DNA of 64,000 bases from Macrostomum lignano. Taxonomy: Eukaryota. Positions 15,717 to 58,606 of this stretch are shown in pieces; position 1 is the stretch's first letter, and the number at the start of each line of letters is the position of its first letter. The stretch lies in contig NIVC01000981.1 in assembly GCA_002269645.1 (NCBI GenBank), positions 191,801 through 255,800 on the forward strand, in the 5' to 3' direction. A program made the position numbers and the translations under genes. The notes below the pieces were generated by a model. It did no database searches. It saw only the letters and a list, made by a program, of their open reading frames with translations, and was not told the origin of the DNA.

Positions 15717-15794
15717 GTTGGTGGACTCTGGAAAGGATACGGAGATTGAGTTGTTTTCTAGGAATCCGGATAGCAACCCCGAGCTGAAAGCTAG

Positions 15795-17965: not shown

Positions 17966-18113
17966 GCCTCTCTGCCTCCATTGAACTTCTCTCCACTCTT
18001 ATTCTGTTGAACTTCAAACCATCGCTTCCTTATTTAGTTGTTAAAATCTGATCCTAAACCTCGTGTATTACCCCACCTTAATCTCACTTGCCCATCTTGA
18101 ACTCTCAATCCAG

Positions 18114-18691: not shown

Positions 18692-18714
18692 GTAATTAGA
18701 ATTTGCATTAGCAT

Positions 18715-19380: not shown

Positions 19381-19394
19381 GTTCCATTACCCAG

Positions 19395-19593
19395 GCTGTT
19401 CAGCTCGCAGATGTTCTCCGAATTCGTCTGTCGCTACCTGACGAGTCCCCAGGATGAGCAATACCTGATGTTCAATCGGGCAGCCGATGAAGCGCTGATT
19501 CGGCGCAAGAAGCTGCTGCCGAATTATCGGGCACTCAAGAAGTCTCTGCTGACTGCCACGGGAGAGGGGGCAAAGAGAGCGGCGACGGGGACA
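19395..19593 (+). CDS. DENN-domain protein, exon 3 (dDENN)
   Basis: Acceptor CCCAG|. Phase 2 join gives RLFSSQMFSEFV (dDENN xQMFxxF motif). Donor ACA|GTGAGC. Confidence 0.85.
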
Positions 19594-19699
19594 GTGAGCA
19601 GCTCTGCTTTTTGGGATTGGGGATTATTTTATCTGAGTTTGGGAGAATTTTAAGTTTGACGGGATTCTGCGATCTGAGTGTGGAAGAACACTTGGATCA

Positions 19700-22348: not shown

Positions 22349-24770
22349 AAATTCAAAGTTTTAATAATTCCTAACTAAAATTCATGTATTTTCTTTTGGT
22401 GCCTACTTTGTAGTAGTATAAATAGTACCAAATGTGCCAGAAAAAGTTAAGTATAGTGTGTACTTTTGTTAAATGAACCCAGTTCCACGACTTTGAAATT
22501 TGTCTTTTGAGATTATCGATTGATTTTTTATTAGAAATTTGATCAAATTTGCATCCTGCGCTGTAATCGTGTGATGATCAATTTGTTTTACTAAGTGAGG
22601 CAGACTTCCGTTGCCTTTTATTGCCTTTTAAGATTTTTAAAAAGAAAAGAGTAACTGAATTTTATTTGCTTATTAATGGTTGTTGATGTTAAATGATTAA
22701 TAAGATCTGCCAGCAGAATATTTTTAACCTGTTTGTAAAAAAATTATTTTGCTCCCAAAAGCTACAAGTTTATTCATGCTATACAATTGTGCTACTTCTG
22801 TTGAGAGCATTTTGTACTTTAGTTTGTTCTTTTAATGTGCCCAATGTTGTTGCTTTCCGGTCTCGCTTTTGCCAGTGAATTCATCGAATTAAATTTATTA
22901 ATAACACGCATGTGATTTTAAAAAACGTAAATTTATCATCAGCTTTCTTGCAATTAACATTCAAGATATTTCTGTCTGATCACCTCCATCATTGAATTAC
23001 ATAGCCCCCATAATTTATTCATTCAGCTTTTTAACTATTTAATTTTATTGTGTCAAAGTCACACCGATATGTGATCTTTCATTTTAGATTTTTTAGTTAA
23101 TAGCTTTTTATTTCATGGTGTATTTTTCGGGTTTAAGACACTAAAAGTACATAAAAGCACGGGTTTAATACTATCGTGTTTGCAGTTTTAAATCTTGATC
23201 TTAATTATTTCTACTCCTATCTAGTTTGTTTATTATTTGACTGTTAATATAGTGACATTAACATAAAATTCACGCATCACTTAATTCCAGTTGTATTAAA
23301 TTTTTATTGTGTACTGACATTTTGTAAATAATGTGTAAATATATTAAATTGTGTAATTCTACATGTGAATATTCTGGCTTTCAATACAATCCAATTTTAA
23401 ATATATTGAAATTGCAATTTGCAAAGCAATTTCATATTTTATGATGCTATATATTTGCTATTAATTGATTTTTACATAATTGACGACTTTTGCTTTTTGT
23501 TTAGAAAATATTTGCATTGTACCACTTTAGGTAACCAAGTAAGATTATAACAGACTTAGAAGCAATAACGACGCTTTCATACAGTGACTGGACTGTACAG
23601 TAGGGCCCCGTGGTTCTTATATTAGCTCAGTCTCAGGGACGATTATTGTGCAGATTAGTTTGTATTGACCACCTTTTCGCAATGTTAGCATGTATACCAT
23701 TTTGAGTCTTAAACATCATTATATCTCCTTATATGGCAATCAGCGCAGCACTTTCATAAATCTTCATTAGATTCATAACTTCAGTCTTGTGAAAATAATT
23801 AGTGTGATGATGCGATATGAAAATTAAGTAGGGAGTCCCTAGCTTTATTGAATAAGTTTTGTATGTAGGTGCCGCCCCACTAGGGCCTCAAGAGGCGGGC
23901 ATCAGCTGAGATTTAATCGCCCCACCCACCACGCATTTGTTATCAAAAGATAAAGTTGTTTTGTTGGTCGTGGGAAATTCAAGGAATCGTGTTGTATTAT
24001 TACTGGTGCGCCTGTCTGTCTAGCCTTTGCGAAGCCATTATAATTACTAATCAATTAATTAGTCAAATAAAGTTGTTTTTATGAACCAATTCAACGTTTT
24101 GGTTATTTGGTTTGACTTTTGGTTTCGTGTTGAAAGTTTTATGACGCTACGGCCGAGGTTTGCTCCGCCAATTTGACCAATCGGAGCGCGAGCCAAAGTG
24201 TGAGAAAGTTTCAACCAAAACAAACCCCAAGTCGGGACAGCCAAGCCTCCTACCCGCCTCACGTGACCTCAGACTTGTTTTGAATATTGCGCTACTTATC
24301 GGGGCTGGGGGCGGTTGTCTTGAAATTTTATGACTACTAGCAGACTGGGGTCTCTACTTTCAGGAGAGGCAATAAAACCGTGTTTACTAGCGCAAGTGGC
24401 GCCACTTTGTCCCAGCTCTTTTAGATTATGCCGTGCAGTTGCACTAATATTGATAAACCGTTTTGTGTCTTTATTTTAAGCCACCTTTCGTAATTTAATT
24501 GCCTTAGTAGGTTTTAGAGACCCACTACAGGCTAGAGCTGGTACAATGGTCCGACCTACCTGGTACCTAAATGAAACATCTATTATATTCATTCTTTACC
24601 AGTTTTTTATTTTTTTTATTTTTCTGATGCTAAGATTGGATGCTTTGCAGAAAGCAACCAACATTTATGCTCGTTACTTTCAAGGCTCTCGCTTAATTAT
24701 TTGTCCTGGGGGTTCGCTAAAAACTGTTCAGCTTCAATTCACATGCGGCCTGAAATCTAACAGCGAAATC

Positions 24771-25103
24771 ATGGATGGTGACGCTAGTCCTAGTGCTTCA
24801 AATTGCAAAACCTCAACAACAGCGCAGGCTGCGCTTCCGCCAGAAGTGCAGCAGGCTCATAAATGTGCGGTTGACCGCGGCGAAGATACCTACATTGACC
24901 CCGCGACTGGTTATCGAGTATTTACTGAACTTGCCCACAAAAAACGTGGACATTGCTGTGGACACTTGTGTAGACATGTAAGTACATTATACAATCTTTA
25001 TTAAATTCAACTGTATACCATAATATTTTCGTTTAAAATCCTAAATATTTTGACGCATAAATTTCAGTGTCCTTACAACCACGAAGCTGTTAAGAAGAGT
25101 TGA
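24771..25103 (+). CDS. C1orf53: C1orf53/DUF5522-family small Cys/His protein, 80 aa, 2 exons (24771-24977, 25068-25103)
   Basis: AHKCAVDRGEDTYIDPATGYRVFTELAHKKRGHCCGHLCRH|CPYNH matches the family motif YxDPATGYxVxTxxAHxxRGxCCGxxCRHCPY. 90-bp GTAAGT...TTTCAG intron restores CPY. Confidence 0.92.
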
Positions 25104-26267: not shown

Positions 26268-27639
26268 ATGTATCATCTACTGAAAGGACCCATTATGCGC
26301 ATCAACGTGTCTAGAGACGACCACAGTCATCTCATTGGGAAAAAGGGTAGCTTCCATAAGAAGCTTCAGGTGGCATCCAAGACCCTGATCAACTTTCCAG
26401 AAGTTGTCAACAAAGGCCGAAAGTTAAAAGGCAATTCGGAAGATGCTTTTATCCAGAGCGACTCTAGTTCATCATCTGCTGATACGCCTGGCATGTCGCG
26501 ATCAGACGAGGTTGTCATCACTCCGGCCGAGCTCGATTTAAAACGCGAGCCATGCCCTCCAGAAGCGGAAGATCGTCTGGCCGAGGTTCTGACCGCGTCG
26601 GTGCAAAACATCCGACGAAACCAGCTAGTCATCATCCGCATGGTATTTCCTAGTCTGCAATCGATTTCGGATGCCATCGCAAACGAGCTTAGTCGAATAG
26701 CTTCCATTGCTTGCTACGAATCAATCTCTATTTCCGTCGAGAAGGAAGCTCCCGCCACTTTTGTGCTCCGCGGCATCATGGAGAGCGGCTCTAAGGTTGT
26801 CTTTGTTGCCAATCTCATTCAGGAGAGCCTAGTTCGCAAGTTCAACCAGCCAATGTCGAAGCTCTACACTGCGGATCGCATTCCCGTCAATCACTGGAAC
26901 CAGGTAGTCCAGACTGTCAACGGAGCGATTCCAAAGAGCTTCCAACTATCCAGCATTGAATCCTCCACGCCAGCCGCCGCTGTGCACGCATTTTTCAAAG
27001 ACATCGGTGTCACTATCGAGCTGAAAGACGACTCCGTTGTGGAAATTTCTAGCCAGGATCCGATGAAGGTTCTAAAGACGAAGATTCTGCTGACCAACTC
27101 GCTGCCAATCAGCATGCTGATCGCTTCCAACACAGTGTCTGAGAATCTGACCGACTCAAACGCTATTCAAATCCTCGAGGATGTCTACAAAGTTCGAATC
27201 AAGTGCAACATCGGCGATGCATTCGGCAGCTCGAATGCGGCATTCAGCGATTCGGCTTATTTCAAACGATTCTTTGTCGGCCAGAAGATTTCTTTGGAGA
27301 CGCACGAATCGAATATTGCTGCACTATTCGATGTAAAATGGCTGCTTTCGCAGAAAAACATGCCACAGCTTTTGTCGCTATGGCAACGAGTTCGGCTTAG
27401 TTGGCCAAAGGCTAATTGTCCAGAGCTGCCATTCTATTTGAATTCGCCGAAGCAGTTCGTCATGGCTAACGCTCGCTCCGGCCCGCGCTCGCCTGAACTC
27501 CGGCAGCCGGCGAATTCCGAGCAGCAGCAGCAGCAGCGGCAGCAGCTGCGTATTCGACCAGCGGCTCTGCTGCTTCGACCCACTAAGCCAGTTCTGCCGT
27601 CGTCTGACCTGCTGAGGAACCTGCAGATATTTGAGTCTG
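26268..27639 (+). CDS. Divergent Bicaudal-C-family KH RNA-binding protein, exon 1
   Basis: RINVSRDDHSHLIGKKG...INFP resembles BicC KH1 (LDVSHTEHSHVIGKGG...IHFP). IQILEDVYKVRI and ISLETHESNIAALFDVKWLL resemble the BicC KH-like repeats. Donor G|GTGAGT at 27640. Confidence 0.75.
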
Positions 27640-27981
27640 GTGAGTTAGCTGCTTTTGCATCTTTGTTCGTAACTTTTTTCTAACCTGTGTACTTTTGGAA
27701 CTCTTTAGCCAACAATAAACATTTGAATTGGCGCCGTCCTTTCTTTTTCTTTTCTTTTTTCTTTTATTTTGATTGGCGTTAAATATTTATAATTTTATTT
27801 TTAATATGGCGCCACGCCACATTTTGTTCATGTTTATTTGGCGCCAGTTTTTCTTCGTTTGGATTTGGCGCTAAATTTTCTTAATTTTGACTCGGCGCCA
27901 GATTTTCTTCGTCTGGATTTGGCGCCAACTTTTGCTCTATTCGATACGACACCTCATCCCCTCTCTGCACACTCAACGCAG

Positions 27982-28188: not shown

Positions 28189-28419
28189 GTGAGCAGCAGA
28201 GTGAGAACTGACTGGTCTTAACTAACTTTATCTCTTAATTTAATTAATTTTTATTTCTCCGCGCATTTTGTTTGAATTGAAAGTGCAGGTCGCTCACTTC
28301 CATTTTTATTCTATTCCCAAATCCCAATCAATCGTTTTAACTTTATGATCCTAACAACGTTAAAATCCCATGTGGAGAATAGAAACTTTAATCTACAGAT
28401 TAGAATCCGAAATGATTTA

Positions 28420-28950
28420 TCCCCCATCAATAATCCCAAATCCCCAATCAATAAACTCAAATCCCCAATCAATAATCCCAAATCCCCATCAATAATCCCG
28501 AATCCCCAATCAATAATCCCAAATCTCCAATCAACAATCCCCAATCAACAATCCCCAATCCCCAATCCCCAATCAATAATCCCAAATCCCCAATCAATAA
28601 TCCCAAATCCCCATCAATAATCCCGAATCCCCAATCAATAATCCCAAATCCCCAATCAACAATCCCCAATCCCCAATCAATAATCCCAAATCCCCAATCA
28701 ATAATCCCAAATCCCCATCAATAATCCCGAATCCCCAATCAATAATCCCAAATCCCCAATCAACAATCCCCAATCCCCAATCAATAATCCCAAATCCCCA
28801 ATCAATAATCCCTAATCCCCAATCAACAATCCCAAATTCCCACCCATCAATAATTCCAAAACCCAATCAATAATTCCAAATCCCAAATCCCCAATCAAAA
28901 ATCCGAAATCCCAATCAATAATCCTAATTCCTCAATAAATTATCTCAAAT
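28420..28950. repeat. AATCCC-rich minisatellite (AATCCCCAATCAATAATCCCA)
   Basis: Directly visible; lies in the putative last intron of the BicC-like gene. Confidence 0.92.
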
Positions 28951-28995
28951 CCTCAAAACCCCATTGTTTTCATTTTCACGTCTTCACCTCTGCAG

Positions 28996-30044: not shown

Positions 30045-33000
30045 GTAGCCTGAACATCTGTTAGACACAGCTGGCGTATCTGTTAGGCAGTTAGTTGGCA
30101 CCTGTTAGACACAACTGGGGCACCTGTTTATAGACACAGCCGGGGCAACTGTACATGTTAGAGACTGCAGCCGGGGCACCTCTTAGACACAGCTGGGAGG
30201 TACCTGTTAGACATAGCCGGGGCAACTGTTATACACAACTGGGGGCACCTTTTAGACACGTCAGCTGAGAGGTAACTGTTAGACACAATTGGGAACCTGT
30301 TGGACACAACTGGAGCAGCTGTTAGACACAGCCGGGGGGGCACCTGTTAGACACAGCCGGGGGGCACCTGTTAGACACAGCCGGGGGCACCTGTTAGACA
30401 CAGCCGGGGGGCAGCTGTTAGACACAGCCGGGGGCACCTGTTAGACACAGCCGGGGGGCACCTGTTAGACACAGCCGGGGGGCAGCTGTTAGACACAGCC
30501 GGGGGCACCTGTTAGACACAGCCGGTGGGCACCTGTTAGACACAGCCGGGGGCCGCACCTGTTAGACACAGCCGGGGGCACCTGTTCGACACAGCCGGGG
30601 GGCAGCTGTTAGACACAGCCGGGGGGCACCTGTTAGACACAGCCGGGGGGCCGCACCTGTTAGACACAGCCGGGGGCACCTGTTAGACACAGCCGGGGGC
30701 ACCTGTTAGACACAGCCGGGGGGCACCTGTTAGACACAGCCGGGGGGCACCTGTTAGACACAGCCGGGGGCACCTGTTAGACACAGCCGGGGGGCAGCTG
30801 TTAGACACAGCCGGGGGCACCTGTTAGACACAGCCGGGGGCAGCTGTTAGACACAGCCGGGGGGCACCTGTTAGACACAACTGGGGGGCACCTGTTAGAC
30901 ACAGCCAGGGGGGCAGCTGTTAGACACAGCCGGGGGTACCTGTTAGACACAGCCGGGGGGGGCAGCTGTTAGACACAGCCGGGGGGCACCTGTTAGACAC
31001 AGCCGGGGGGCAGCTGTTAGACACAGCCGGGGGGCACCTGTTAGACACAGCCGGGGGCACCTGTTAGACACAGCCGGGGGGCAGCTGTTAGACACAGCCG
31101 GGGGGCACCTGTTAGACACAGCCGGGGGCACCTGTTAGACACAGCCGGGGGGCAGCTGTTAGACACAGCCGGGGGCACCTGTTAGACACAGCCGGGGGGG
31201 CACCTGTTAGACACAGCCGGGGGCACCTGTTAGACACAGCCGGGGGCACCTGTTAGACACAGCCGGGGGGCACCTGTTAGACACAGCCGGGAGGGCAGCT
31301 GTTAGACACAGCCGGGGGGCACCTGTTAGACACAGCCGGGGGGCACCTGTTAGACACAGCCGGGGGGCCGCACCTGTTAGACACAGCCGGGGGCACCTGT
31401 TAGACACAGCCGGGGGGGCAGCTGTTAGACACAGCCGGGGGGCACCTGTTAGACACAGCCGGGGGCACCTGTTAGACACAGCCGGGGGGCACCTGTTAGA
31501 CACAGCCGGGGGCACCTGTTAGACACAGCCGGGGGGCACCTGTTAGACACAGCCGGGGGGCCGCACCTGTTAGACACAGCCGGGGGCACCTGTTAGACAC
31601 AGCCGGGGGGCACCTGTTAGACACAGCCGGGGGCAGCTGTTAGACACAGCCGGGGGGCCGCACCTGTTAGACACAGCCGGGGGCACCTGTTAGACACAGC
31701 TGGGGGGCACCTGTTAGACAGCTGGGGGGCACCTGTTAGACACAGCCGGGGGGCACCTGTTAGACACAGCCGGGGGCCGCAACTGTTAGACACAGCCGGG
31801 GGCACCTGTTAGACACAGCTGGGGGGCACCTGTTAGACAGCTGGGGGGCACCTGTTAGACACAGCCGGGGGCACCTGTTAGACACAGCCGGGGGGCACCT
31901 GTTAGACACAGCCGGGGGGCAGCTGTTAGACACAGCCGGGGGGCACCTGTTAGACACAGCCGGGGGGCACCTGTTAGACACAGCCGGAGGGCACCTGTTA
32001 GACACAGCCGGGGGGCAGCTGTTAGACACAGCCGGGGGGCACCTGTTAGACACAGCCGGGGGGCAGCTGTTAGACACAGCCGGGGGGCACCTGTTAGACA
32101 CAGCCGGGGGCACCTGTTAGACACAGCCGGGGGGCAGCTGTTAGACACAGCCGGGGGCACCTGTTAGACACAGCCGGGGGGCACCTGTTAGACACAGCCG
32201 GGGGGCAGCTGTTAGACACAGCCGGGGGCACCTGTTAGACACAGCCGGGGGCACCTGTTAGACACAGCCGGGGGCCGCACCTGTTAGACACAGCCGGGGG
32301 CACCTGTTAGACACAGCCGGGGGGCAGCTGTTAGACACAGCCGGGGGCACCTGTTAGACACAGCCGGGGGGCAGCTGTTAGACACAGCCGGGGGGCACCT
32401 GTTAGACACAGCCGGGGGGCAGCTGTTAGACACAGCCGGGGGCACCTGTTAGACACAGCCGGGGGGCAGCTGTTAGACACAGCCGGGGGCACCTGTTAGA
32501 CACAGCCGGGGGCGACTGTTAGACACAGCCGGGGGCACCTGTTAGACACAGCCGGGGGCACCTGTTAGACACAGCCGGGGGGGCAGCTGTTAGACACAGC
32601 CGGGGGCACCTGTTAGACACAGCCGGGGGCACCTGTTAGACACAGCCGGGGGGCCGCACCTGTTAGACACAGCCGGGGGCACCTGTTAGACACAGCCGGG
32701 GGGCAGCTGTTAGACACAGCCGGGGGGCACCTGTTAGACACAGCCGGGGGCCGCACCTGTTAGACACAGCCGGGGGGCACCTGTTAGACACAGCTGGGGG
32801 GCACCTGTTAGACACAGCCGGGGGGCAGCTGTTAGACACAGCCGGGGGGCACCTGTTAGACACAGCCGGGGGGGCAGCTGTTAGACACAGCCGGGGGGCA
32901 GCTGTTAGACACAGCCGGGGGCACCTGTTAGACACAGCCGGGGGCACCTGTTAGACACAGCCGGGGGGGGCACCTGTTAGACACAGCCGGGGGGGGCAGC

Positions 33001-34237
33001 TGTTAGACACAGCCGGGGGCACCTGTTCGACACAGCCGGGGGCACCTGTTAGACACAGCTGGGGGGCACCTGTTAGACACAGCCGGGGGGCAGCTGTTAG
33101 ACACAGCCGGGGGCACCTGTTAGACACAGCCGGGGGGCACCTGTTAGACACAGCCGGGGGCACCTGTTAGACACAGCCGGGGGCACCTGTTAGACACAGC
33201 CGGGGGCACCTGTTAGACACAGCCGGGGGCACCTGTTAGACACAGCCGGGGGCAGCTGTTAGACACAGCCGGGGGGCACCTGTTAGACACAGCCGGGGGC
33301 ACCTGTTAGACACAGCCGGGGGGCACCTGTTAGACACAGCCGGGGGCACCTGTTAGACACAGCCGGGGGGCACCTGTTAGACACAGCCGGGGGGCAGCTG
33401 TTAGACACAGCCGGGGGCAGCTGTTAGACACAGCCGGGGGGGGGCAGCTGTTAGACACAGCCGGGGGGGGCAGCTGTTAGACACAGCCGGGGGGCACCTG
33501 TTAGACACAGCCAGGGGGCCGCACCTGTTAGACACAGCCGGGGGCACCTGTTAGACACAGCCGGGGGGCAGCTGTTAGACACAGCCGGGGGCACCTGTTA
33601 GACACAGCCGGGGGCCGCACCTGTTAGACACAGCCGGGGGCACCTGTTAGACACAGCCGGGGGGCACCTGTTAGACAGCTGGGGGGCACCTGTTAGACAC
33701 AGCCGGGGGCACCTGTTAGACACAGCTGGGGGCACCTGTTAGACACAGCTGGGGGGCACCTGTTAGACACAGCTGGGGGGCACCTGTTAGACACAGCCGG
33801 GGGCACCTGTTAGACACAGCCGGAGGCACCTGTTAGACACAGCCGGGGGGCAGCTGTTAGACACAGCCGGGGGGCACCTGTTAGACACAGCCGGGGGGCA
33901 CCAGTTAGACACAGCCGGGGGCACCTGTTAGACACAGCCGGGGGGCAGCTGTTAGACACAGCCGGGGGGCACCTGTTAGACACAGCCGGGGGCCGCACCT
34001 GTTAGACACAGCCGGGGGCCGCACCTGTTAGACACAGCCGGGGGCACCTGTTAGACACAGCTGGGGGGCACCTGTTAGACACAGCTGGGGGGCACCTGTT
34101 AGACACAGCCGGGGGGCACCTGTTCGACACAGCCGGGGGCACCTGTTAGACACAGCCGGAGGCACCTGTTCGACACAGCCGGGGGCACCTGTTAGACACA
34201 GCCGGGGGTACCTGTTCGACACAGCCGGGGGCACCTG
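30045..34237. repeat. 4.2-kb 23-26-bp minisatellite (CACCTGTTAGACACAGCCGGGGGG), ~180 units
   Basis: Directly visible. Variant units CACCTG / CAGCTG / CCGCACCTG, variable G-run length, degenerate left edge. Unit count estimated from length. Confidence 0.98.
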
Positions 34238-34377
34238 ATAAAAGCTTGAGTCGATAAAGTCGTCCCTAAAGCTGGTCTCCTGTTTCTGTTTAAATTTTCT
34301 AGATATTTTAAGCCCAAAATGTCGTTGGGTTCGCCTTATCCCTATTCCTATAATTTTCATACATTTTTCTAGTTGCC

Positions 34378-34647
34378 ATGGAGACGTACCGCTTTGCCTG
34401 TCCCGGCGCCCCGGCCTGCCACCGTGCCTACGCGGAGCCGCAGGCGCTGAAGGCGCACACCCTGTGCTGCGAGCACGCCCAGGCTCGAATCCTGCCAGCC
34501 TGGAACGCCAGCATGACGCCAGCCCAGGGATTTGCCGCCTCGCGCGTCTTCTATCACGACAGGAGTCTGGGCAACATCACTATCTGCCGGCGCGGCGTTG
34601 TAGAGTTCAACCGAGGTCGCGACCGCTTCATACATTCGTCCTATTGA
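34378..34647 (+). CDS. Small hypothetical protein (89 aa) with an N-terminal C2HC zinc-finger-like motif
   Basis: Strongly GC3-biased codons on +. Acceptor TTTTTCTAG| at 34372, then GCCATGG. Motif C-x5-C-x12-H-x3-C (CPGAPAC HRAYAEPQALKA H TLC C). Confidence 0.75.
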   Translation: METYRFACPGAPACHRAYAEPQALKAHTLCCEHAQARILPAWNASMTPAQGFAASRVFYHDRSLGNITICRRGVVEFNRGRDRFIHSSY

Positions 34648-35904
34648 ATTTTGATTCAAATCGACCATTGAGTAGAACTGGGAATTCAGATTTTAATAGC
34701 TTCAAAACAAATTAATATTTTTAGTAGTTCATCGGAAATCATGCTACTTTAAGTAGCGAAAACGAGTTTTTTTCGTAATACTTCCTACCGTGTAGAAAAA
34801 AAAACTTAAAACAGATTTTCTATAAAACTTTTAAATAGACTCAGAAGCTGTACAAAATCAATGATCCAGTTTTTTATTTGTTAGAACTTTTATTTTTCCA
34901 GACAAGTAGAGGTTCGAGTTTCTTACCTTATCATAAAAGTACAAAATATTTTAGCTACACTCGTATAACAAATTTATTCGAAGGTAAAAATACATGTTTA
35001 CATATATTGCAATGGGAAATTTCCAACAGCGAATTATTAACAATTATACTAGAGAATTAATACAGAAAGTTTTACAACACAAAACTTGGCAGGCTTGAGG
35101 TTAACTTTAACTTTGAGACGGCATTTGATTTGTTATAATTGGCTACCCAGTCGATCAAACAGAGCAGTGATAAATAAATTAATAAGATCATCAGAACACT
35201 GATAAGATAACTTATCATTATAATTACAGATAAGCAAATTAATCCCTCTGTACAATCTGCGCTTCACAAATATAACTTTGTTAATATTGCTGCTTTGTTA
35301 AAATGGCATGGTCTAACATTTTTGACTAGATTGTGCGAGTGAGCAGATATATGAGCATGGCGGGGTGAATGAAATTTAGCCCAATTTAATCGCTGATTCG
35401 CAAAATTATGAGCTACGCAAAAGATACAGCTTCGAATAAAATTGCAATTCGCGCTATAGATTCTACTCATAAGTAGGAGAATTTGAGTTTTAAAAATCAA
35501 TCAAATACAGTTAGCAGATGAATTGTGACAATCCAGTACATGCGGAGAGACCTGAAAGACAAATTCTTGGCGATTTTTAGCCGCCCAAAAATTATTTTTC
35601 AAAATGTGCGCTCCAGAAATTATACTACTGTCGTTAATGGCGTCGTGAGTAGTATGTATACACTATCGTAGATATATGCGGCGATTTGTTCGCGGCATCA
35701 GACGACAACTTCATAAATGACTTTTCTTTGCCGGCCCGGGTGCAGGAATGTGCCGCTGTTGTCTGACCCCGACTCCAGGTCTGCAATCGGGGGTGACATT
35801 GGGAAGCGACATAAAATTAATTATCTGTAGCAATTGTGTAACAAAAATTTATATTGAAGGTTAAAACAAGTCTAAAAATCTTCTACGAACGATTGATGGG
35901 CATC

Positions 35905-37497: not shown

Positions 37498-37679
37498 TGT
37501 TATTCCCAACAATGGGATGATTCGCGCTGAGCAGAGTGCTGAACACCTTGTTGGTCTGGTCAATGGAGGTCTCGTCTGTGCTGGTCAGGCTGGGGTGGGG
37601 GGAGACCATGGCGTAGGGCTTGCCGGAGCTGAAGGACTTGTAGGTGGAGGCCATGAGGTCCGGCTCCGGGTGCCGGCGC
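37498..37679 (-). CDS. Echinoid-like receptor, cytoplasmic exon
   Basis: Acceptor CACCCGCAG|, phase 2. RRHPEPDLMASTYKSF...; donor A|GTGAGT. Confidence 0.75.
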
Positions 37680-37740: not shown

Positions 37741-38368
37741 CAGGTAGATTGGGTAGACAAGTATACTGGGTAGACAGGTATACTGGGTAGACAGGTAGAT
37801 TGGGTAGACAGGTAGATTGGGTAGACAAGTATACTGGGTAGACAGGTATACTGGGTAGACAGGTAGATTGGGTAGACAGGTAGATTGGGTAGACAAGTAT
37901 ACTGGGTAGACAGGTATACTGGGTAGACAGGTATACTGGGTAGACAGGTATACTGGGTAGACAGGTATACTGGGTAGACAGGTATACTGGGTAGACAGGT
38001 AGATTTGGTAAACAGGTAAATTGGGTGAGCATGTAGATTATGTAGGCAGGTAGATTGGGTAGACAGGTAAATTGGTTAGACAGGTAGATGGGGTAGACAG
38101 GTAGATTAAGTAGACAGGTAGATTGGGTAGACAGGTAGATTGGGTAGACAGGTAGATTGGGTAGACAGGTAGATTGGGTAGACAGGTAGATTGGGTAGAC
38201 AGGTAGATTGGGTAGACAGGTAGATTGGGTAGACAGGTAGATTGGGTAGACAGGTAGATTGGGTAGACAGGTAGATTGGGTAGACAGGTAGATTGGGTAG
38301 ACAGGTAGATTGGGTAGACAGGTAGATTGGGTAGACAGGTAGATTGAGTAGACAGGTAGATCGGGTAG
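37741..38368 (+). repeat. 17-bp minisatellite array (GGGTAGACAGGTAGATT), ~37 units
   Basis: Directly visible; GGTATACT variant units at ~37760-37990. Confidence 0.97.
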
Positions 38369-38376
38369 CAGCTCAC

Positions 38377-38590
38377 AGCCTGCTGTCCCGTCTGGCCGGG
38401 GGGCTGTCCAGCTCGCTGGCTCTCGCAGCCGATGTTGCGGCATCGCCGGAAGACGCGGCCTCCTTGCTGGCTAGCGGGCGATTCCGGCAGCAGAAGAAGA
38501 CCAGGATGGCCACCAGGCAGATGATGAGCAGCGTGCAGAACGCAGCCACTATGATGATGGTGAGCGAGCTCACCTCCGGGAAGCCCGACA
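38377..38590 (-). CDS. Echinoid-like receptor, transmembrane exon (214 nt)
   Basis: Acceptor AATTGCAG|. IIIVAAFCTLLIICLVAILVFFCC followed by RNR. Donor CT|GTGAGC; phase 1 to 2. Confidence 0.88.
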
Positions 38591-38627
38591 CTGCAATTCA
38601 GTGGGGAGGCTGCGGGGTAGACACTTC

Positions 38628-39640
38628 TCATTGACTAACCTGTTTACTTGTCTACCCAATCGACCTGTCTACACAATCTACCTGTCTAACCAATCTACCT
38701 GTCTACCCAATCTACGTGTCTACCCAATCTACGTGTCTACCCAATCTACCTGTCTACCCAATCTACCTGTATACCCAATCTACCTGTCTACCCAATCTAC
38801 GTGTCTACCCAATCTACGTGTCTACCCAATCTACGTGTCTACCCCATCTACCTCTTTACCCAATCTACCCGTCTACTCAATCTACCTGTCTACCCAATCT
38901 ACCTGTCTACCCCATCTACCTGTCTAACCAATCTACGTGTCTACCCCATCTACCTGTTTACTCAATCTACCTGTTTACTCAATCTACCTGTCTATCCAAT
39001 CTACCTGTCTACCCAATCTACCTGTCTACCCAATCTACCTGTCTACCCAATCTACCTGTCTACCCAATCTACCTGTCTACCCAATCTACCTGTTTACCCA
39101 ATCTACCTGTCTAACCAATCTACGTGTCTACCCCATCTACCTGTTTACCCAATCTACCTGTCAAACCAATCTACCTGTCTACCCAATCTACCTGTCTACC
39201 CAATCTACCTGTCTACCCAATCTACCTGTCTACCCAATCTACCTGTCTACCCAATCTACCTGTCTACCCAATCTACCTGTCTACCCAATCTACCTGTCTA
39301 ACCAATCTACGTGTCTACCCCATCTACCTGTTTACCCAATCTACCTGTCAAACCAATCTACCTGTCTACCCAATCTACCTGTCTATCCAATCTACCTGTC
39401 AAACCAATCTACCTGTCTTACCAATCTACCTGTCTAACCAATCTACCTGTCTACCCAATCTATCTGTCTACCCCATCTACCTGTCTAACCAATCTACCTG
39501 TCTACCCAAATCTACCTGTTTACCCAATCTACCTGTCTACCCAATCTACCTGTCTACCCAATCTACCTGTCTTACCAATCTACCTGTCTAACCAATCTTC
39601 CTGCCTACCTATTCTACCTGTCTACCCTGCCCAATATCTA
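38628..39640 (-). repeat. Same 17-bp minisatellite in inverted orientation (AATCTACCTGTCTACCC), ~60 units
   Basis: The unit is the exact reverse complement of the 37741-38368 unit. Confidence 0.97.
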
Positions 39641-43813: not shown

Positions 43814-44434
43814 ACGGAGCTTTTGTCTATGGTAGCAAGGCTTGGCACAGAAGCATTTAGTTTGGTCCAACAAGCATCAATTTGGTCCAAACGATCGTGA
43901 GCCATTCGGCAAATTCTTGCCCCCTAGCAACCGTCTGCAGGTTGTTGAGTACCGCTGGAATATCAGCGTCTCTACCATCAATTTTCAGTCGCCTTTCCAG
44001 AGCTCTGCTGATAGTCCAAATCTGAACTGTTCCTTCAATTTATCTGCTGCACTTCTACAACGTCAACAAAGGGTTCGTCTTAACTGCATCGAGTAGCAGT
44101 TGGACCTGAGGCTCTCGCAACTTGCCTTGGCGATTGCCACCCCTTTGCAAGCGATTTAGGCCGCCAGTGGTTTCAACGCGCTGATGGATGCTGTAAACCA
44201 TATTTTCTTTTACATTCAGCAGCCGTGCAATTTCCTTTGGGTGTTCATCTCTGTCGAGCGCTTCGATCACAAGCCAATGGCCTTGGTTCGACAGCCCAGC
44301 ATATGGTCCACAATTCTGGGTATGATGTTGCACCTCCGCAGCAGTTGCAGATGAAGCAATGGACCAAATTGATGCTTGTTGGACCAAATGAAATGCCGCT
44401 GTGCCAGCCTTGCTACCATAGACAAAGGCTCCGT
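43814..44434 (-). mobile_element. IS630/Tc1-family deletion derivative with ~75-bp TIRs and an HTH-only transposase remnant
   Basis: 43814-43889 and 44360-44434 are reverse complements, each with two TTTGGTCCA repeats, and are TA-flanked. Internal IEALDRDEHPKEIARLLNV...TGGLNRLQRGG...TISRALERRL with stops; no DDE domain. Confidence 0.82.
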
Positions 44435-44542
44435 TACATTGGCAAGCCTATCCTGGATTAAATTCAATGCGCTTAGGCACAAATGAGCGGCAAAAAGCTA
44501 ATGTTATCCGAAGGTCTCAAACACTATAATTCATCAACTCAC

Positions 44543-45445
44543 TATTCTCAGTGGTGGCAGCAGGGCCGCACACGGCTAGCCTGTCAGCCAGACAGAGGGA
44601 CAGTCGATAGGTCAGAGTGGATAGATCCAAGCCCGTTAGGCGTCCATCGCTGGGAGCGTCGCAAGCTGACTGCTGCAGCTTCACCTGACGCCACTGTCGC
44701 TCGGAGGCGTCCAACTTCTGCTGTTGTTGCTGCTGCTGCGTTTGACTTTTTTTTACCGACGCGGCAGCTTCCACCCGAAGGCAGTAGCCCGCCGGCCAAG
44801 CGTCCAGCAGCAGAGTTGTCGCGCTGTTGCCGTCTCGTCGCAGCCCCGTCACGGTGGGCATCGCCAGTTCCGACGTGGTGAAGCGCAACTCCGCCGAGTT
44901 CGAACCGGAACCGAGCTGGTTTCTGGCGAAGACAACCACGGAATAGTTGGTTGCCGGGAGCAGATTCGTCAGGTTGGCTGCCACCGTCCGCAGCGATGAG
45001 TCGTGCTCGATTCGAATTGGTTCGTCAGCTGATCGACCCTCAGGCGGCGGAGTGCAGCGAAGCCACATCGATGCCTGTAGGCCTCCGTCGAATCCTGGTT
45101 GCCATGACAACGAGACTCGATCCCAGTTCGGAGGCGACAACATTCTCAAGTTGGTTGGCGGATCCGGCGGTCCTCTAGGGACCACGTCTACGCTGTGTCT
45201 GGCCTCGCCCAGGGCGTTCCTAGCAACGCAGGTGAACCGACCGTGCGAGCGAACGCCGAACAGCGTTGCTCGGTGCTTGTACGGCGTCAGCGTGTCCTGA
45301 CTGACGTTGCTCACGTAGCTGTTCGACCCGACCTCCCAGGTCACTTTTGGCTTTGGCTGAGCCAGGATTTCGCACTCCAGCGAGATCTCGGAGGCTGCCG
45401 GATCCAAGGCCAGCTTGGTGGTGCTGGTCTGAATCAGCGGCGGAA
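44543..45445 (-). CDS. Echinoid-like receptor exon: Ig7 + FN3 + degenerate second FN3
   Basis: LECEILAQPKPKVTW...GRFTCVARNALG, then PPDPPTNL...LSWQPGFDGG...LTNLLPATNYSVVVFARNQLG. 903 bp, phase 1-1, AG/GT ends. Confidence 0.92.
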
Positions 45446-45804: not shown

Positions 45805-45919
45805 CTGGTGCATTGGTGTGGTCAGGTGAGTGGCATTGTGTATATGCGACTTTAATAGTTGATAAGAAAAGCGTTCGTTAACTCTCGCCCACTCGTTTTA
45901 AATGTGAACGCTGGTCTCT

Positions 45920-46442
45920 GATTTGCCAGTGGCACTTTTCTATCCCCTATTTGGTGTCTGATTGGCTAGCGGCACTTCTCTACCCCTATTTGGTGTCTGA
46001 TTGGCCAGTGGTACTTCTCTACCCCCTATCCGGTGTCTGATTGGCTAGCGGCACTTCTCTATCCCTTATTTGGTGTCTGATTGGCAGTGGCGCTTCTCTA
46101 AGTCCTATTTGGTGTCTGATTGGCCAGTGGCACTTCTCTACCCCCTTTTTGGTGTCTGATTGGCAGTGGCGTTTCTCTAAGTCCTATTTGGTGTCTGATT
46201 GGCAGTGGCGCTTCTCTAAGTCCTATTTGGTGTCTGATTGGCCAGTGGCACTTTTCTACCCCCTATTTGGTGTCTGATTGGCCAGTGAAACTTCTCTACC
46301 CCCTATTTGGTGTCTGATTGGCCAGTGCCACTTCTCTACCCCCTATTTGGTGTCTGATTGGCCAGTGGCACTTCTCTACCCCTATTTGGTGTCTGATTGG
46401 CCAGTGGTACTTCTCTACCCCCTATCTGGTGTCTGATTGGCA
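45920..46442. repeat. 39-40-bp minisatellite (CTATTTGGTGTCTGATTGGCCAGTGGCACTTCTCTACCCC), ~13 units
   Basis: Directly visible; fills the intron 45805-46455. Confidence 0.95.
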
Positions 46443-47624: not shown

Positions 47625-48880
47625 GCCAGTGTACCGCAAACCTACTCAAGTCAACCACAAACCTACTCAAGTCTACCGCAAACCTACTTAAGTCTACTGC
47701 AAACCTACTCAAGTCTACCGCAAACCTACTCAAGCCTACCGCAAACCTACTCAAGTCTACCGCAAACCTACTCAAGTCTACCGCAAACCTACTCAAGTCT
47801 ACCGCAAACCTACTCAAGTCTACTACAAACCTACTCAAGTCTACTACAAATCTACTCAAGTCTACTACAAACCTACTCAAGTCTACCGCAAACCTACTCA
47901 AGTCTACGGCAAACCTACTCAAGTCAACCACAAACCTTATACTCAAGTCTACCGCAAACCTACTCAAGTCTACTACAAACCTACTCAAGTCTACCGCAAA
48001 CCTACTCAAGTCTACTACAAACCTACTCAAGCCTACCGCAAACCTACTCAAGCCTACCGCAAACCTACTCAAGCCTACCGCAAACCTACTCAAGTCTACC
48101 GCAAACCTAATCAAGTCTACCGCAAACCTACTCAAGCCTACCGCAAACCTACTCAAGCCTACCGCAAACCTACTCAAGTCTACCGCAAACCTACTCAAGT
48201 CTACCGCAAACCTACTCAAGTCTACCACAAACCTACTCAAGTCAACCACAAACCTGCTCAAGTCAACCACAAACCTACTCAAGTCTACTACAAATCTACT
48301 CAAGTCTACTACAAACCTACTCAAGTCTACCGCAAACCTACTCAAGTCTACGGCAAACCTGCTCAAGTCAACCACAAACCTACTCAAGTCTACTACAAAT
48401 CTACTCAAGTCTACTACAAACCTACTCAAGTCTACCGCAAACCTACTCAAGTCTACGGCAAACCTACTCAAGTCAACCACAAACCTTATACTCAAGTCTA
48501 CCGCAAACCTACTCAAGTCTACTACAAACCTACTCAAGTCTACCGCAAACCTACTCAAGTCTACCACAAACCTACTCAAGTCTACCGCAAACCTACTCAA
48601 GTCTACTACAAACCTACTCAAGTCTACCGCAAACCTACTCAAGTCTACCGCAAACCTACTCAAGCCTACCGCAAACCTACTCAAGTCTACTAAAAACCTA
48701 CTCAAGTCTACCGCAAACCTATTCAAGTCTACCGCAAACCTACTCAAGTCAACCACAAACCTTATACTCCAGTCTACCGCAAACCTACTCAAGTCTATTA
48801 CAAACCTACTCAAGTCTACCGCAAACCTACTCAAGTCTACCACAAACCTACTCAAGTCTGCCACAAACCTTCTCAAGAGA
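47625..48880. repeat. 21-bp minisatellite (AAACCTACTCAAGTCTACCGC), ~60 units
   Basis: Directly visible; fills the intron 47560-48964. Confidence 0.97.
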
Positions 48881-49291: not shown

Positions 49292-50409
49292 CTGTGATGG
49301 GGAAAGTTATCGGGGTTGATGAAGCTGGTTTAGCGAGGTTTACGGTGAAGGTTTGGGGAAATTTTGATATAAAGTTCGGCTTCCCTAAAAAAGGAAGAGG
49401 ATAGAATCCGTTGTTAGAAGCACTGACAATTGGCAGCAGTGTGAAGGAGTTCAACCTGAGACTAATTAGGAATTTTATTTCACTCAATTTAATCCCGCTG
49501 AGAGAGGCAGGCAGTTCATGTGACGATGGCGCAACCACCAGCTTGTTAGCCGGGGCTGTGCGGGGTCGGTCCTGACTCATCCCAGACGCTCGATCGGCGG
49601 AGACGTCAGCACCTCGAGTCCCATCCTCCCGTCCGCTATTGAGCGGACACGAGTGCTCAGGAATTTCTAGTGTTTAGAGACGTAAAGAAAGGAATTTTCC
49701 AATGGGATTAAAAGCTTCTTGACACGCGACAAGAAGGCGAAATGAACGCAGAAAATATGAGACCAGCTGACTCACGGCGCTTCTCGTGACAACTGCATGT
49801 CCACTTCCTGCTTAGGGATAATCCTGAATCCTCTTTTCTCTATTTTATCAGACCTTAATCCCAGCTAGCCTCTAGCAGCCTCTTTAAGTCTACTCGCCAA
49901 CAAGCCCATTCAATTGAATTAAAAGCCTTTTGCTCATTTTTGTGCTCACAATTTGAATTGGCTTTTTCTTATATTAGCTCAGTGCTGAGAGGTGAGCAGC
50001 CAATGCAGCGTGTGTTGTCACTCAGCGCCGCAAATACCCTCTCAAGCCCTTCTGTTCCCAGGTAATTGACAGTCAATCCAAGCTCACTCGACTGAATTGT
50101 CTGAGAGAGAAAGTTAAAAAAAAGTTCATTCAAATCAAGTGTAAATACATCGTGTGTCTGGCGAGGCAGGAGCGGAGCTGCAGAGGGCAAGAGAGTGTGA
50201 GGCACTGAGGTTCTTCAATTACTGAATTACATCAATTTTATGCCTGCAATTTGTGTTCTGCCTGATGAAATTTCTTCTCGCAAAAAATTCAACTGTCTGT
50301 TAATAGGCTTTTGGATAATCGGTATTGAGTTATTGCTGCCGGACCGAGGCTGCTGGCTTGCGGTGAAGCTGCCGCTTTGCGATCTCGCAAGGCCCGAAAT
50401 CTTTGTCTA

Positions 50410-51150
50410 CTCTCTCCCCTCTCTCCTCTCTCCTCTCCTCTCTCCTCTCCTCTTCCCTCCCCTCTCTCCTCTCTCCTCTCTCCTTTCTCCTCTCTCCTCT
50501 CTACTCTCTCCTCTCCTCTCTCCTCTCCTCTTCCCTCCCCTCTCTCCTCTCTCCTCTCTCCTCTCCTCTTCCCTCCCCTCTCTCCTCTCTTCTCTCTCCT
50601 CTCTCCTCTCTCCTCACTCCTCTCTCCTCTCCTCTTCCCTCCCCTCTCTCCTCTCTTCTCTCTCCTCTCTCCCCTCTCCTCTCTCCTCTCTCCTCTCTCC
50701 TCTCTCCTCTCTCCTCTCTCCTCTCTCCTCTCTCCTCTCCTCTCTCCTCTCCTCTCTCCTCTCTCCTCTCTCCTCTCTCCTCTATCCTCTCTCCTCTCTC
50801 CTCTCTCCTCTCCTCTCTCCTCTCTCCTCTCATCTCTCCTCTTCCCTCCCCTCTCTCCTCTCTCCTCTCTCCCCTCTCCTCTCTCCTCTCTCCTCTCCTC
50901 TCTCCTCTCTCCTCTCCTCTCTCCTCTCTCCTCTCCTCTCTCCTCTCTCCTCTCCTCTCTCCTCTCTCCTCTCCTCTCTCCTCTCTCCTCCCTCCTCCCC
51001 TCTCCTCTCTTCTCTCTCCTCTCTCCCCTCTCCCCTCTCCTCTCCTCTCTTCTCTCCTCTCTCCTCTCCTCTCTCCTCTCTCCTCTCTCCACTATCCACA
51101 CTTCATCTCCACTCTCCTCTCTCCTCTCTCCTCTCATCTATTGTCTGTCC
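50410..51150. repeat. (CTCTC)n-like polypyrimidine tract
   Basis: Directly visible. Confidence 0.95.
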
Positions 51151-51448
51151 TCTCTCTTTAAATTCAAAGCATTATCTCTTTGTCTCCCACAAAAGGTTAA
51201 GAAAATTGAACAAAAATTTACGTGAATGAGCCCAGTTGACCTGAGCAGCCACAAAATCTTCCCGAGCAACAACTGACGCTTTGCTACTCTCTGCTCTCTT
51301 TAGCCTGTCATTCAGAATTTCTCAATTACACAAAAAGCACTTAAATTAGTCAAGGATTTCTTCAACTGCTTCAGTCTAAACCGTATATATTTTTTCAGAT
51401 ATTCAAATTCTTCTCGTGCCTCCGAGCTTCAAAGTATATTAGTAATAA

Positions 51449-56452: not shown

Positions 56453-57191
56453 CTGCAATTTCATAAAGTTGATGCTTAACCAAAGAAATCCTTATTTTGA
56501 GAGGTTAGTATTTAAATTTCGGAATAGCTTCGATATCATGGCTGTCAAATTACCTGCCTGAGTATGACTGTGCGACTGAGATCACCTGTCAAAATCAGCT
56601 ACCTGATCTCTATTACATGTACCTGACCTGCCCATGACCCCTATTACTTAGCCTTCTATGACCTCTATTCTATGGCCTGTTTATGACCTCTATTCTGTGA
56701 TTTGTCTAATGACATTTATTTTATTACCTGTCTAAGACCTCTATTACTTGACCTGTCCATGACCTCTATTTACCTGTCTTTTTATGACCAGCTACAACGC
56801 AACCACGTGTTTATGGTTATTCCTTCCGCTGAAAGGTGTCACAAAGCAGCAAACGCATAAAAGCAATTCCCCAATCTCTTTTTAGACTCGGGGTAGGGGC
56901 AGCAAAGTAAAGACCGGCTACTTTAAATTTTGCCAATTTCAATTTCGCTTTTTGCGTCTGGACAAGGCAGAAAACACACGCGGAGCTCGGGCGAGGAAGG
57001 AAGTGTCGGATGCACAGCACGGGAGGGTTGGACTGCGGGCAAACAGTGTGCCATTCAGCATGACGATGTTTGGAAAGATTTTTCGGCTTTTTTCTCTCTT
57101 GTATAGCTGGCGAGCTTTGTTTTACTAAACTGTCCGTGGATCGCGGGTTTCTTGTCGTGGGCTCGAGTCATTACCGGGATTGCTTCCTCAC

Positions 57192-57329: not shown

Positions 57330-58606
57330 GTGACTGACTGACTGACTGACTGGCTGACTGACTGACTGACTGACTGACTGACTGACTGATTGACTGACTG
57401 ACTGACTGACTGACTGACTGATTGACTGACTGACTGACTGACTGACTGACTGACTGACTGACTGACTGACTGACTGACTGACTGACTGACTGACTGACTG
57501 ACTGACTGACTGACTGACTGACTGACTGACTGACTGACTGACTGACTGACTGGCTGACTGACTGACTGACTGACTGACTGACTGGCTGACTGACTGACTG
57601 ACTGACTGGCTGACTGACTGACTGACTGACTGACTGACTGACTGACTGACTGACTGACTGACTGACTGACTGACTGACTGACTGACTGACTGACTGACTG
57701 ACTGACTGACTGACTGACTGACTGACTGACTGACTGACTGACTGACTGACTGACTGACTGACTGACTGACTGACTGACTGACTGACTGACTGACTGACTG
57801 ACTGACTGACTGACTGACTGACTGACTGGCTGACTGACTGACTGACTGACTGACTGACTGACTGACTGACTGACTGACTGACTGACTGACTGACTGACTG
57901 ACTGACTGACTGACTGACTGACTGGCTGACTGACTGACTGACTGACTGACTGACTGACTGACTGACTGACTGACTGACTGACTGACTGACTGACTGACTG
58001 ACTGACTGACTGACTGACTTACTGATTGACTGACTGACTGACTGACTGACTGATTGACTGACTGACTGACTGACTGACTGACTGACTGACTGACTGACTG
58101 ACTGACTGACTGACTGACTGACTGACTGACTGACTGACTGACTGACTGACTGACTGACTGGCTGACTGACTGACTGACTGACTGACTGACTGACTGACTG
58201 ACTGACTGACTGACTGACTGACTGACTGACTGACTGACTGACTGACTGACTGACTGACTGGCTGACTGACTGACTGACTGACTGACTGACTGACTGACTG
58301 ACTGACTGACTGACTGACTGACTGACTGACTGACTGACTGACTGACTGACTGACTGATTGACTGACTGACTGACTGACTGACTGATTGACTGACTGACTG
58401 ACTGACTGACTGACTGACTGACTGACTGACTGACTGACTGACTGACTGACTGACTGGCTGACTGACTGACTGACTGACTGACTGACTGACTGACTGACTG
58501 ACTGACTGACTGACTGACTGACTGACTGACTGACTGACTGACTGACTGACTGACTGACTGACTGGCTGACTGGCTGACTGACTGACTGACTGACTGACTG
58601 ACTGGC
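57330..58606. repeat. 1.27-kb (TGAC)n tetranucleotide microsatellite
   Basis: Directly visible, with sparse TGGC/TGAT interruptions. Confidence 0.98.

What the first reader, a model, noticed from the sequence alone, without database searches (positions are those of the whole stretch)
37741..39640. Transmembrane exon clamped between inverted arrays of the same 17-bp minisatellite
Seen: the 214-nt exon encoding the receptor's only TM helix (38377-38590) has (GGGTAGACAGGTAGATT)n starting ~9 bp beyond its donor and the exact reverse complement (AATCTACCTGTCTACCC)n starting ~37 bp beyond its acceptor. No other exon in the window has this arrangement. The pre-mRNA could form a ~600-bp register-tolerant duplex with the exon as the loop. 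Established: inverted intronic repeats (Alu pairs in mammals) drive back-splicing, exon skipping and ADAR editing. Inference: a minisatellite-built RNA switch. It could yield a 214-nt circRNA and/or a TM-less mRNA, where the frameshift gives ...TTEN-SAGTRSRTSWPPPTSPSAPASPTPWSPPTPA*, i.e. a secreted ectodomain or an NMD target. Array length would tune the membrane/soluble ratio.
Basis: partly seen in the sequence, partly recalled or inferred. Interest (0 to 1): 0.85.

Follow-up and report, generated by a model that had tools for sequence, protein, structure and literature searches.

The report
Exon flanked by inverted minisatellite arrays
In a flatworm (Macrostomum lignano) cell-adhesion receptor gene, the exon encoding the membrane anchor lies between two oppositely oriented arrays of one 17-bp repeat that could pair in the RNA, but this is most likely a by-product of a very repeat-rich genome, not a proven splicing switch.

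Summary
Array A (37741-38368, 37 units) and array B (38645-39627, 58 units) have the same 17-bp consensus in opposite orientation. They bracket a 214-nt exon (38590-38377, minus strand) that encodes the only transmembrane helix of an intact Ig/FN3 receptor gene of Macrostomum lignano. The unit occurs nowhere else in the window. In silico, 592 of the 628 downstream-arm bases pair with the upstream arm.

The "RNA switch" reading has no support beyond this pairing potential. The only database protein for this gene includes the exon. One third of the window is tandem arrays, and six of the gene's seven introns carry minisatellites. Arrays crowding the splice sites are normal in this gene. A second complementary array pair (CT-rich against GGAGA) brackets exon A. 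The two arms carry different private variants and show no co-variation.

Best reading: a short inverted copy of a local repeat seeded the second array, and both arrays then grew independently. Any circular RNA, skipping or double-stranded RNA would be a side effect. This is a new variant of a known kind (intronic inverted repeats). Interest is moderate.

The parts
38377..38590 (-). 214-nt exon encoding the single transmembrane helix (..SSLTIIIVAAFCTLLIICLVAILVFFCC..). It enters in phase 1. Its length is not a multiple of 3.
   Evidence: Sequence and splice sites; translation and frame; hydrophobicity; junctions 100% identical to UniRef A0A1I8I8Q1.
37741..38368 (-). Array A. It fills 90% of the 697-nt intron TM->c1. 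In the transcript it reads (AAUCUACCUGUCUACCC)n, 37 units. Fourteen perfect units lie next to the donor, and a 68-bp higher-order repeat lies at the far end.
38645..39627 (-). Array B, at the 3' end of the 5952-nt intron D->TM. In the transcript it reads (GGGUAGACAGGUAGAUU)n, 58 units, with degenerate units continuing inward to about 38632. It contains a 187-bp higher-order repeat and runs of 5 and 7 perfect units.
38369..38376 (-). Donor GTGAGCTG. These are the only non-array bases between the exon and array A.
38591..38644 (-). Acceptor region (branch point, pyrimidine tract, AG). It holds a 9-mer GGGTAGACA in A orientation at 38615-38623 that is complementary to 38649-38657.
44543..45423 (-). 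Upstream exon D (Ig and FN3 domains and a stalk). Its donor is A|GTGAGT. It would be the 5' partner of a skip junction.
37498..37679 (-). Downstream exon c1 (cytoplasmic tail). In a skipped mRNA it holds the premature stop codon, 87 nt before the c1-c2 junction.
35697..35780 (-). Last coding exon c2, ending ..RKVIYEVVV*.

Best explanation
This is a real, non-artefactual pair of inverted arrays of one 17-bp minisatellite inside an intact Macrostomum lignano IgSF adhesion-receptor gene. It most likely arose without selection.

Inferred origin: a short piece of a local repeat was copied in inverted orientation about 280 bp away, on the other side of the exon (a snap-back or templated-repair type of event). 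Both seeds then expanded independently by slippage and unequal exchange until they filled all intron space not needed for splicing.

Shown: the anatomy, the independent variant sets of the two arms, the intact reading frame and the predicted pairing.

Inferred consequence: in the pre-mRNA the arms can form a duplex of about 590 bp with the TM exon in a loop of roughly 280-390 nt. Some molecules are therefore probably back-spliced into a 214-nt circle, or skip the exon to give a frameshifted, NMD-prone mRNA. The duplex may also be edited or diced. These are side effects tolerated by the gene, not a tuned switch. The main product keeps the TM exon.
For: Organism and gene: the sequence is 100% identical over 276 aa to M. 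lignano A0A1I8I8Q1 across the D-TM-c1-c2 junctions. An open frame runs through 8 exons, 1015 aa, with V-set, C2-set and further Ig domains, one fn3 and one TM helix.

Repeat-saturated context: 34% of the window and 36% of the gene span are tandem arrays. Six of seven introns carry minisatellites covering 31-90% of their length. Arrays lie 8-13 nt from donors and 54-68 nt from acceptors in three different introns. Simple and tandem repeats make up 15% of this genome (PMC5730564). A second complementary array pair brackets exon A.

Local common origin: the consensus is identical, the unit is unique to these two arrays in 64 kb, and one double-substitution variant is shared.

Independent growth afterwards: the private variants differ. 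Array A has G14T+T16C in 10 units. Array B has G3T x12, G10C x8, G6A x7 and T17G x6. The higher-order repeats differ and are not in mirror order.

Array A is probably the derived copy: four other arrays in the window share 7-mers with the unit, all in the B orientation (P about 0.006).

Pairing potential.

No flanking homology and no target-site duplication.
Against: I could not examine RNA-seq, small-RNA or population data, so an appreciable or regulated effect is not excluded. The arrangement puts both arms as close to the splice sites as splicing allows, and a run of 14 perfect units sits right at the donor. This is what a selected structure might also look like. The argument for local origin rests on one coincidence in one window; the genome-wide abundance of the unit is unknown. 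The inverted-seeding mechanism is inferred, with only a 9-mer relic (38615-38623) as a hint.
Confidence: 0.55

Rival explanations
1. The paired arrays are a selected RNA switch that sets the ratio of membrane-bound receptor to circular RNA or TM-less (secreted or NMD-degraded) product, with array length as the tuning knob.
For: A duplex of about 590 bp is predicted with the exon looped out. Inverted repeats of 30-40 nt close to the splice sites are sufficient for circularisation in human cells (PMC4201285). Skipping gives a defined frameshift product. The homogeneous runs of units imply fast length change.
Against: No TM-less isoform or other product was found; the only model keeps the exon. 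The skipped mRNA has a stop codon 87 nt before the last junction, which favours decay over a secreted protein (the NMD rule is from general knowledge). The arms show no compensatory or shared derived variants. The repeat context predicts such pairs by accident. Greater hairpin stability can inhibit circle formation (PMC4201285).
Confidence: 0.13
2. The intronic hairpin acts mainly as long double-stranded RNA. It would be a substrate for ADAR editing or for Dicer, like the hairpin-RNA loci that give endogenous siRNAs in Drosophila, and could feed back on this gene or on other copies of the repeat.
For: The predicted duplex has perfect stretches up to 135 bp. Planarian flatworms have ADARs that suppress the dsRNA response (PMC8797187). 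Flatworms respond strongly to long dsRNA (general knowledge).
Against: No small-RNA or editing data were available. The arms are purely intronic and the unit is not found elsewhere in the window, so no target is evident. ADAR and Dicer were not examined in M. lignano here.
Confidence: 0.1
3. A DNA-level effect. The inverted arrays recombine and flip the 276-bp centre, so that some chromosomes or cells carry the TM exon in antisense and lose the receptor. The pair would be a fragile or polymorphic site rather than an RNA device.
For: The arms are 628 bp and 89% identical, with identical tracts up to 135 bp, separated by only 276 bp. One double-variant unit is shared between the arms, which is compatible with past exchange. 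Inverted repeats are known to promote inversion and breakage (general knowledge).
Against: The window shows the functional orientation with an intact frame. The private variants are mostly not shared, which argues against frequent exchange. Divergence and a spacer of hundreds of bp are known to stabilise inverted repeats (general knowledge).
Confidence: 0.07
4. A foldback-type transposable element, whose arms are built of tandem sub-repeats, inserted here.
For: It superficially has the same architecture: long inverted arms made of short tandem repeats around a unique centre.
Against: The centre is an in-frame exon of the host gene with proper splice sites. There is no target-site duplication, no homology outside the arrays and no transposase. 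No second copy occurs in 64 kb.
Confidence: 0.03
5. An assembly artefact: a chimeric palindromic long read or a mis-joined repeat.
For: Tandem arrays are hard to assemble, and this genome's assemblies are known to be difficult (PMC5730564).
Against: The arms differ in length (628 against 983 bp), in private variants and in higher-order structure, and are not mirror images. The centre is unique, non-palindromic and keeps the reading frame across D-TM-c1. An independent protein model has the same exon order.
Confidence: 0.05

Closest known systems
Exons flanked by inverted intronic repeats that promote back-splicing (Alu pairs in primates, reverse-complementary matches in other animals, the long inverted repeats around mouse Sry)
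   Same: Complementary sequences lie in both flanking introns, close to canonical splice sites, and are predicted to bring the exon's two ends together (PMC4201285).
   Different: The arms are not dispersed transposon copies or a segmental duplication. They are two arrays of one 17-bp minisatellite, so pairing has no fixed register and arm length can change quickly. The organism is a flatworm, for which I found no circular RNA literature. No circular product has been shown.
Exon skipping by looping out an exon in an RNA hairpin (Solnick-type engineered hairpins; intronic stems that regulate FGFR2 or Dscam splicing)
   Same: The exon lies in the loop of a long stem formed by the two introns. 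Skipping is the predicted outcome and gives a defined product.
   Different: The natural regulatory stems are short, conserved and show co-variation. This stem is about 590 bp, repetitive and shows no co-variation. Alternative use of the exon is not documented.
Foldback (FB) transposons of Drosophila
   Same: Long inverted arms composed of short tandem repeats.
   Different: The centre is a host coding exon. There is no target-site duplication, no other copy in the window and no transposase.
Hairpin-RNA (hpRNA) loci that give endogenous siRNAs in Drosophila
   Same: A long inverted repeat, partly built from tandem units, transcribed on one strand.
   Different: This one is intronic, with a protein-coding exon in the loop. 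No small RNAs or targets are known.

Membership tests
Inverted-repeat-flanked, circular-RNA-producing exon | Reverse-complementary sequences in both flanking introns | tested here: met
   628-nt arms, 89% complementary; identical consensus unit.
Inverted-repeat-flanked, circular-RNA-producing exon | Canonical AG and GT splice sites on the exon, left free by the stem | tested here: met
   AG at 38592-91 and GTGAGC from 38376. The innermost predicted arm pair is 38754-38368, so both sites are in the loop.
Inverted-repeat-flanked, circular-RNA-producing exon | Back-splice junction detected in RNA, resistant to RNase R | not testable with these tools
   No RNA-seq access.
Inverted-repeat-flanked, circular-RNA-producing exon | Circle formation depends on pairing of the arms | not testable with these tools
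   Needs minigenes. Only an in-silico arm flip was done.
Structure-regulated alternative exon | Both inclusion and skipping isoforms exist | tested here: inconclusive
   Only an inclusion model (P0001) was found in 5.8 billion protein clusters. M. lignano is barely represented in that database.
Structure-regulated alternative exon | The stem is maintained by compensatory change or conservation | tested here: not met
   The arms carry different private variants, and only the consensus and one variant are shared. No orthologue or paralogue was available for comparison.
Foldback transposon | Inverted arms made of tandem sub-repeats | tested here: met
Foldback transposon | Target-site duplication at the outer ends, and a mobile, non-host centre | tested here: not met
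   No direct repeat or homology at the flanks. The centre is an in-frame host exon.
Foldback transposon | Multiple copies in the genome | tested here: inconclusive
   No other copy of the unit in 64 kb and none in metagenome contigs. The rest of the genome was not available.
Palindromic assembly artefact | Arms are mirror-image copies, including their variants | tested here: not met
   The arms differ in length, variants and higher-order repeats.
IgSF cell-adhesion receptor (the host gene) | Ig domains, an fn3 domain, a single TM helix and a short tail | tested here: met
   Pfam finds V-set, C2-set_2, 4-5 further Ig domains and fn3. One TM helix. The best solved relatives are contactin-2, DSCAM and titin, at the domain level only.

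The most novel reading that the evidence does not exclude
Two length-variable minisatellite arrays in opposite orientation act as a heritable, register-free rheostat. Their pairing diverts a variable share of this receptor's pre-mRNA into a 214-nt circular RNA or a frameshifted, decaying mRNA. Array length polymorphism would then set receptor dosage between individuals or homeologous copies, and similar pairs may be common in this repeat-rich genome.
Probability: 0.1. Interest if true: 0.75.

Novelty: new variant of a known kind. Interest (0 to 1): 0.4.

Why it matters
If the pairing has a measurable effect, it would show that ordinary minisatellite growth can create strong back-splicing or exon-skipping structures from nothing, without transposons. 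It would also tie a fast-mutating DNA length to an RNA-processing outcome. M. lignano is suited to test this, because transgenesis exists (PMC5730564) and a third of this locus is arrays. If there is no effect, the locus is still a useful example of how far introns can fill with repeats while splicing signals are spared. It also shows that a spliceosome can tolerate an intronic duplex of about 590 bp around an essential exon.

Tried and rejected
1. I looked for paralogues, orthologues and a TM-less isoform with two protein-database searches. Only P0001 and one distant Ig protein came back.

2. I tried to fetch other M. lignano contigs by exact protein look-up with P0001, the exon C ORF and the KH-domain ORF. 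Nothing was on record.

4. I scanned metagenome contigs for a two-unit 34-mer. There were no matches.

5. I ran Rfam over the whole window. There were no matches.

6. I searched for homology or target-site duplications outside the arrays to test the transposon and segmental-duplication readings. None was found, so both are rejected.

7. I tested the palindromic-artefact reading with a unit-by-unit variant map. It is rejected.

8. Literature searches for circular RNA in flatworms and for minisatellite-built inverted repeats in back-splicing found nothing relevant. One cited paper (Ivanov et al. 2015) was not held.

9. I considered that the 5' splice-site-like CAG|GUAGAU in each unit of the upstream array acts as a decoy. 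It differs from this gene's GTGAGT-type donors at positions +3 to +5, and I did not pursue it.

Full report
**What is there.** The window carries two arrays of a 17-bp minisatellite. Array A is at 37741-38368 (36.9 copies, 92% matches). Array B is at 38645-39627 (57.8 copies, 90% matches). After reverse complement and rotation their consensus units are identical, 17 of 17. The arms align as an inverted repeat of 628 nt at 89% complementarity in more than twenty registers. With up to three mismatches the unit occurs 92 times in the 64 kb, and every occurrence is inside the two arrays. The chance expectation is 0.2, and no shuffle out of 100 reached 92.

**The gene.** The arrays lie in a gene on the minus strand. 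I derived eight exons with AG/GT borders and one open frame of 1015 codons:
- A, 56452-56093
- B, 49291-48965
- B', 47559-47431
- C, 47329-46456
- D, 45423-44543
- TM, 38590-38377
- c1, 37679-37498
- c2, 35780-35697

Exon A begins in phase 1, so at least one more exon lies upstream.

Pfam finds a V-set Ig domain, a CD80-like C2-set Ig domain, four to five further Ig domains and one fn3 domain. The best solved relatives are contactin-2, DSCAM and titin, which is similarity at the domain level only. The protein has a single strongly hydrophobic segment, and the 214-nt exon encodes it.

A database search returned UniRef A0A1I8I8Q1 of Macrostomum lignano. It is 100% identical over 276 residues across the D-TM-c1-c2 junctions. 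This identifies the organism and independently supports the splice junctions. That model then continues into an ORF at 34.4-34.7 kb instead of the in-frame stop (..IYEVVV*) that I read. I take that continuation to be a prediction artefact.

- The exon borders, the single TM helix and the frameshift peptide after skipping are all correct.
- The premature stop lies 87 nt before the c1-c2 junction. By the usual rule (general knowledge) this makes the skipped mRNA a decay target rather than a good source of secreted ectodomain.
- Array A begins 8 nt beyond the donor. Regular units of array B begin 54 nt beyond the acceptor, and degenerate ones about 41 nt, rather than 37.
- "No other exon has this arrangement" is true for specific minisatellites. 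However, exon A is bracketed, about 5 kb away on each side, by a CT-rich array (50406-51158) and a (GGAGA)n array (61742-63848). These are complementary over about 800 nt at 82%.

**Pairing.** I folded 2001 nt of pre-mRNA (39660 to 37660). The minimum free energy is -1300.7 kcal/mol, and 592 of the 628 downstream-arm bases pair with the upstream arm. The innermost arm pair is 38754-38368, so the exon and both splice sites sit in the loop. Each arm alone folds weakly (-159 and -32.5 kcal/mol). With the downstream arm flipped the energy is -510.9. The longest perfectly complementary stretch is 135 nt. Whether it forms in vivo is not shown.

**Not an artefact and not a transposon.**
- A unit-by-unit map shows that the arms have different private variants. 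Array A has G14T+T16C in 10 units. Array B has G3T in 12, G10C in 8, G6A in 7 and T17G in 6.
- The higher-order repeats differ: 68 bp in A and 187 bp in B.
- The arm lengths differ and the variants are not in mirror order.
- Only the consensus unit and one double-substitution unit are shared.

A palindromic chimeric read would give mirror-image arms, so that reading is rejected. There is no homology and no target-site duplication outside the arrays. The centre is an in-frame host exon. This excludes a foldback-type element or a segmental inverted duplication.

**Context.**
- Tandem arrays make up 34% of the window and 36% of the gene span.
- Six of the seven introns contain minisatellites that cover 31-90% of their length.
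- In three different introns arrays come within 8-13 nt of a donor or 54-68 nt of an acceptor. Arrays have filled the space that splicing signals leave free.
- The published genome paper reports 15% simple and tandem repeats genome-wide and notes the assembly difficulties they cause (PMC5730564).

Arrays crowding an exon are therefore normal here. Only the same-family, opposite-orientation pairing is special, and the CT/GA pair around exon A shows that complementary pairs are not unique even within this gene.

**Origin (inferred).** The unit occurs only in these two adjacent arrays, and the arrays share one rare variant. I therefore favour one local origin over two independent arrivals. The statistical weight is modest, because it rests on one coincidence in one window.

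Four other arrays in the window share 7-mers with the unit, all in the B orientation (P about 0.006 against shuffled units). This suggests that B has the native orientation and A is an inverted copy. A 9-mer of the unit in A orientation lies at 38615-38623, between the acceptor and array B. It is complementary to 38649-38657 and may be a relic of small inverted templated copying. I propose that a short inverted copy seeded the second array and that both then expanded independently. The runs of perfect units (14 in A, 7 and 5 in B) point to recent expansion.

**Function.** The geometry matches what is known to be sufficient for back-splicing. Inverted repeats of 30-40 nt next to the splice sites are enough in human cells. 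The same study found that a more stable hairpin can inhibit circle formation and that thermodynamics alone does not decide the outcome (PMC4201285). Looping an exon out in a hairpin can cause skipping (general knowledge). Planarians have ADARs that deal with double-stranded RNA (PMC8797187); M. lignano was not examined.

Some circular RNA, some skipped and decayed mRNA, and some editing or dicing are therefore plausible side effects. I found no evidence for a regulated switch or for tuning by array length:
- The only protein on record keeps the exon.
- There is no co-variation between the arms.
- The repeat-rich context predicts such structures by accident.

RNA-seq, small-RNA data, other assemblies and paralogous loci could not be reached. 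I found no paper on circular RNA in flatworms or on inverted repeats built from minisatellites in back-splicing.

**Verdict.** My best reading, at 0.55, is a tolerated by-product of local inverted seeding plus runaway minisatellite growth, with RNA side effects. The switch hypothesis gets about 0.13. It is a new variant of a known kind, namely intronic inverted repeats around an exon. Interest is moderate: the test is simple (four junction counts in existing RNA-seq data) and the organism allows minigene experiments.

Noticed in passing
window 50406-51158 and 61742-63848: A CT-rich array and a (GGAGA)n array are complementary over about 800 nt at 82%. They bracket exon A (56452-56093, 360 nt, in frame) at about 5 kb on each side. 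This is a second possible intron-intron pairing in the same gene, if the upstream array is within the transcript.
   Followed up: partly
window 28419-28956, 45912-46442, 47628-48877, 56624-56778: Four other minisatellites share 7-mers with the 17-bp unit (TCTACCC, GTCTACC, CCCAATC, ACCTGTCTA). All are in the orientation of array B (P about 0.006 against shuffled units). This hints at related origins or a common sequence bias of arrays in this region.
   Followed up: partly
window 38615-38657: A 9-mer of the unit in array-A orientation (GGGTAGACA, 38615-38623) sits between the acceptor and array B and is complementary to 38649-38657. It is a small hairpin at the orientation switch point and may be a relic of inverted templated copying.
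   Followed up: partly
window 1-64000: 34% of the window is tandem arrays: 32 arrays, including a 4.1-kb 24-mer array at 30097-34237, (TGAC)318 at 57331-58604 and (GGAGA)415 at 61742-63848.
   Followed up: partly
window 34369-34668 (minus strand): The UniRef model A0A1I8I8Q1 splices from exon c2 into this ORF, which has no Pfam match, instead of using the in-frame stop after ..IYEVVV. This is probably a gene-prediction artefact. The hydrophobic C-terminus I read could be a PDZ-binding type tail; this was not tested.
   Followed up: partly
window 1200-1850 (+), 8220-9430 (-), 44055-44387 (-): Mariner/Tc1-like transposase remnants: HTH domains, a Mos1-type HTH and a partial DDE domain. The last one lies inside the intron D->TM.
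   Followed up: partly
window 15129-19653 (+), 24546-25004 (+), 26268-27683 (+): Neighbouring plus-strand coding pieces: DENN-domain exons with minisatellites between them, a DUF5522 ORF and a 471-aa ORF with a KH domain.
   Followed up: no
window 44517-44542 (minus strand): Reading through the exon D donor gives ..TTENSELMNYSV* after 8 codons. Intron retention or early polyadenylation could therefore also yield a TM-less ectodomain without exon skipping.
   Followed up: no
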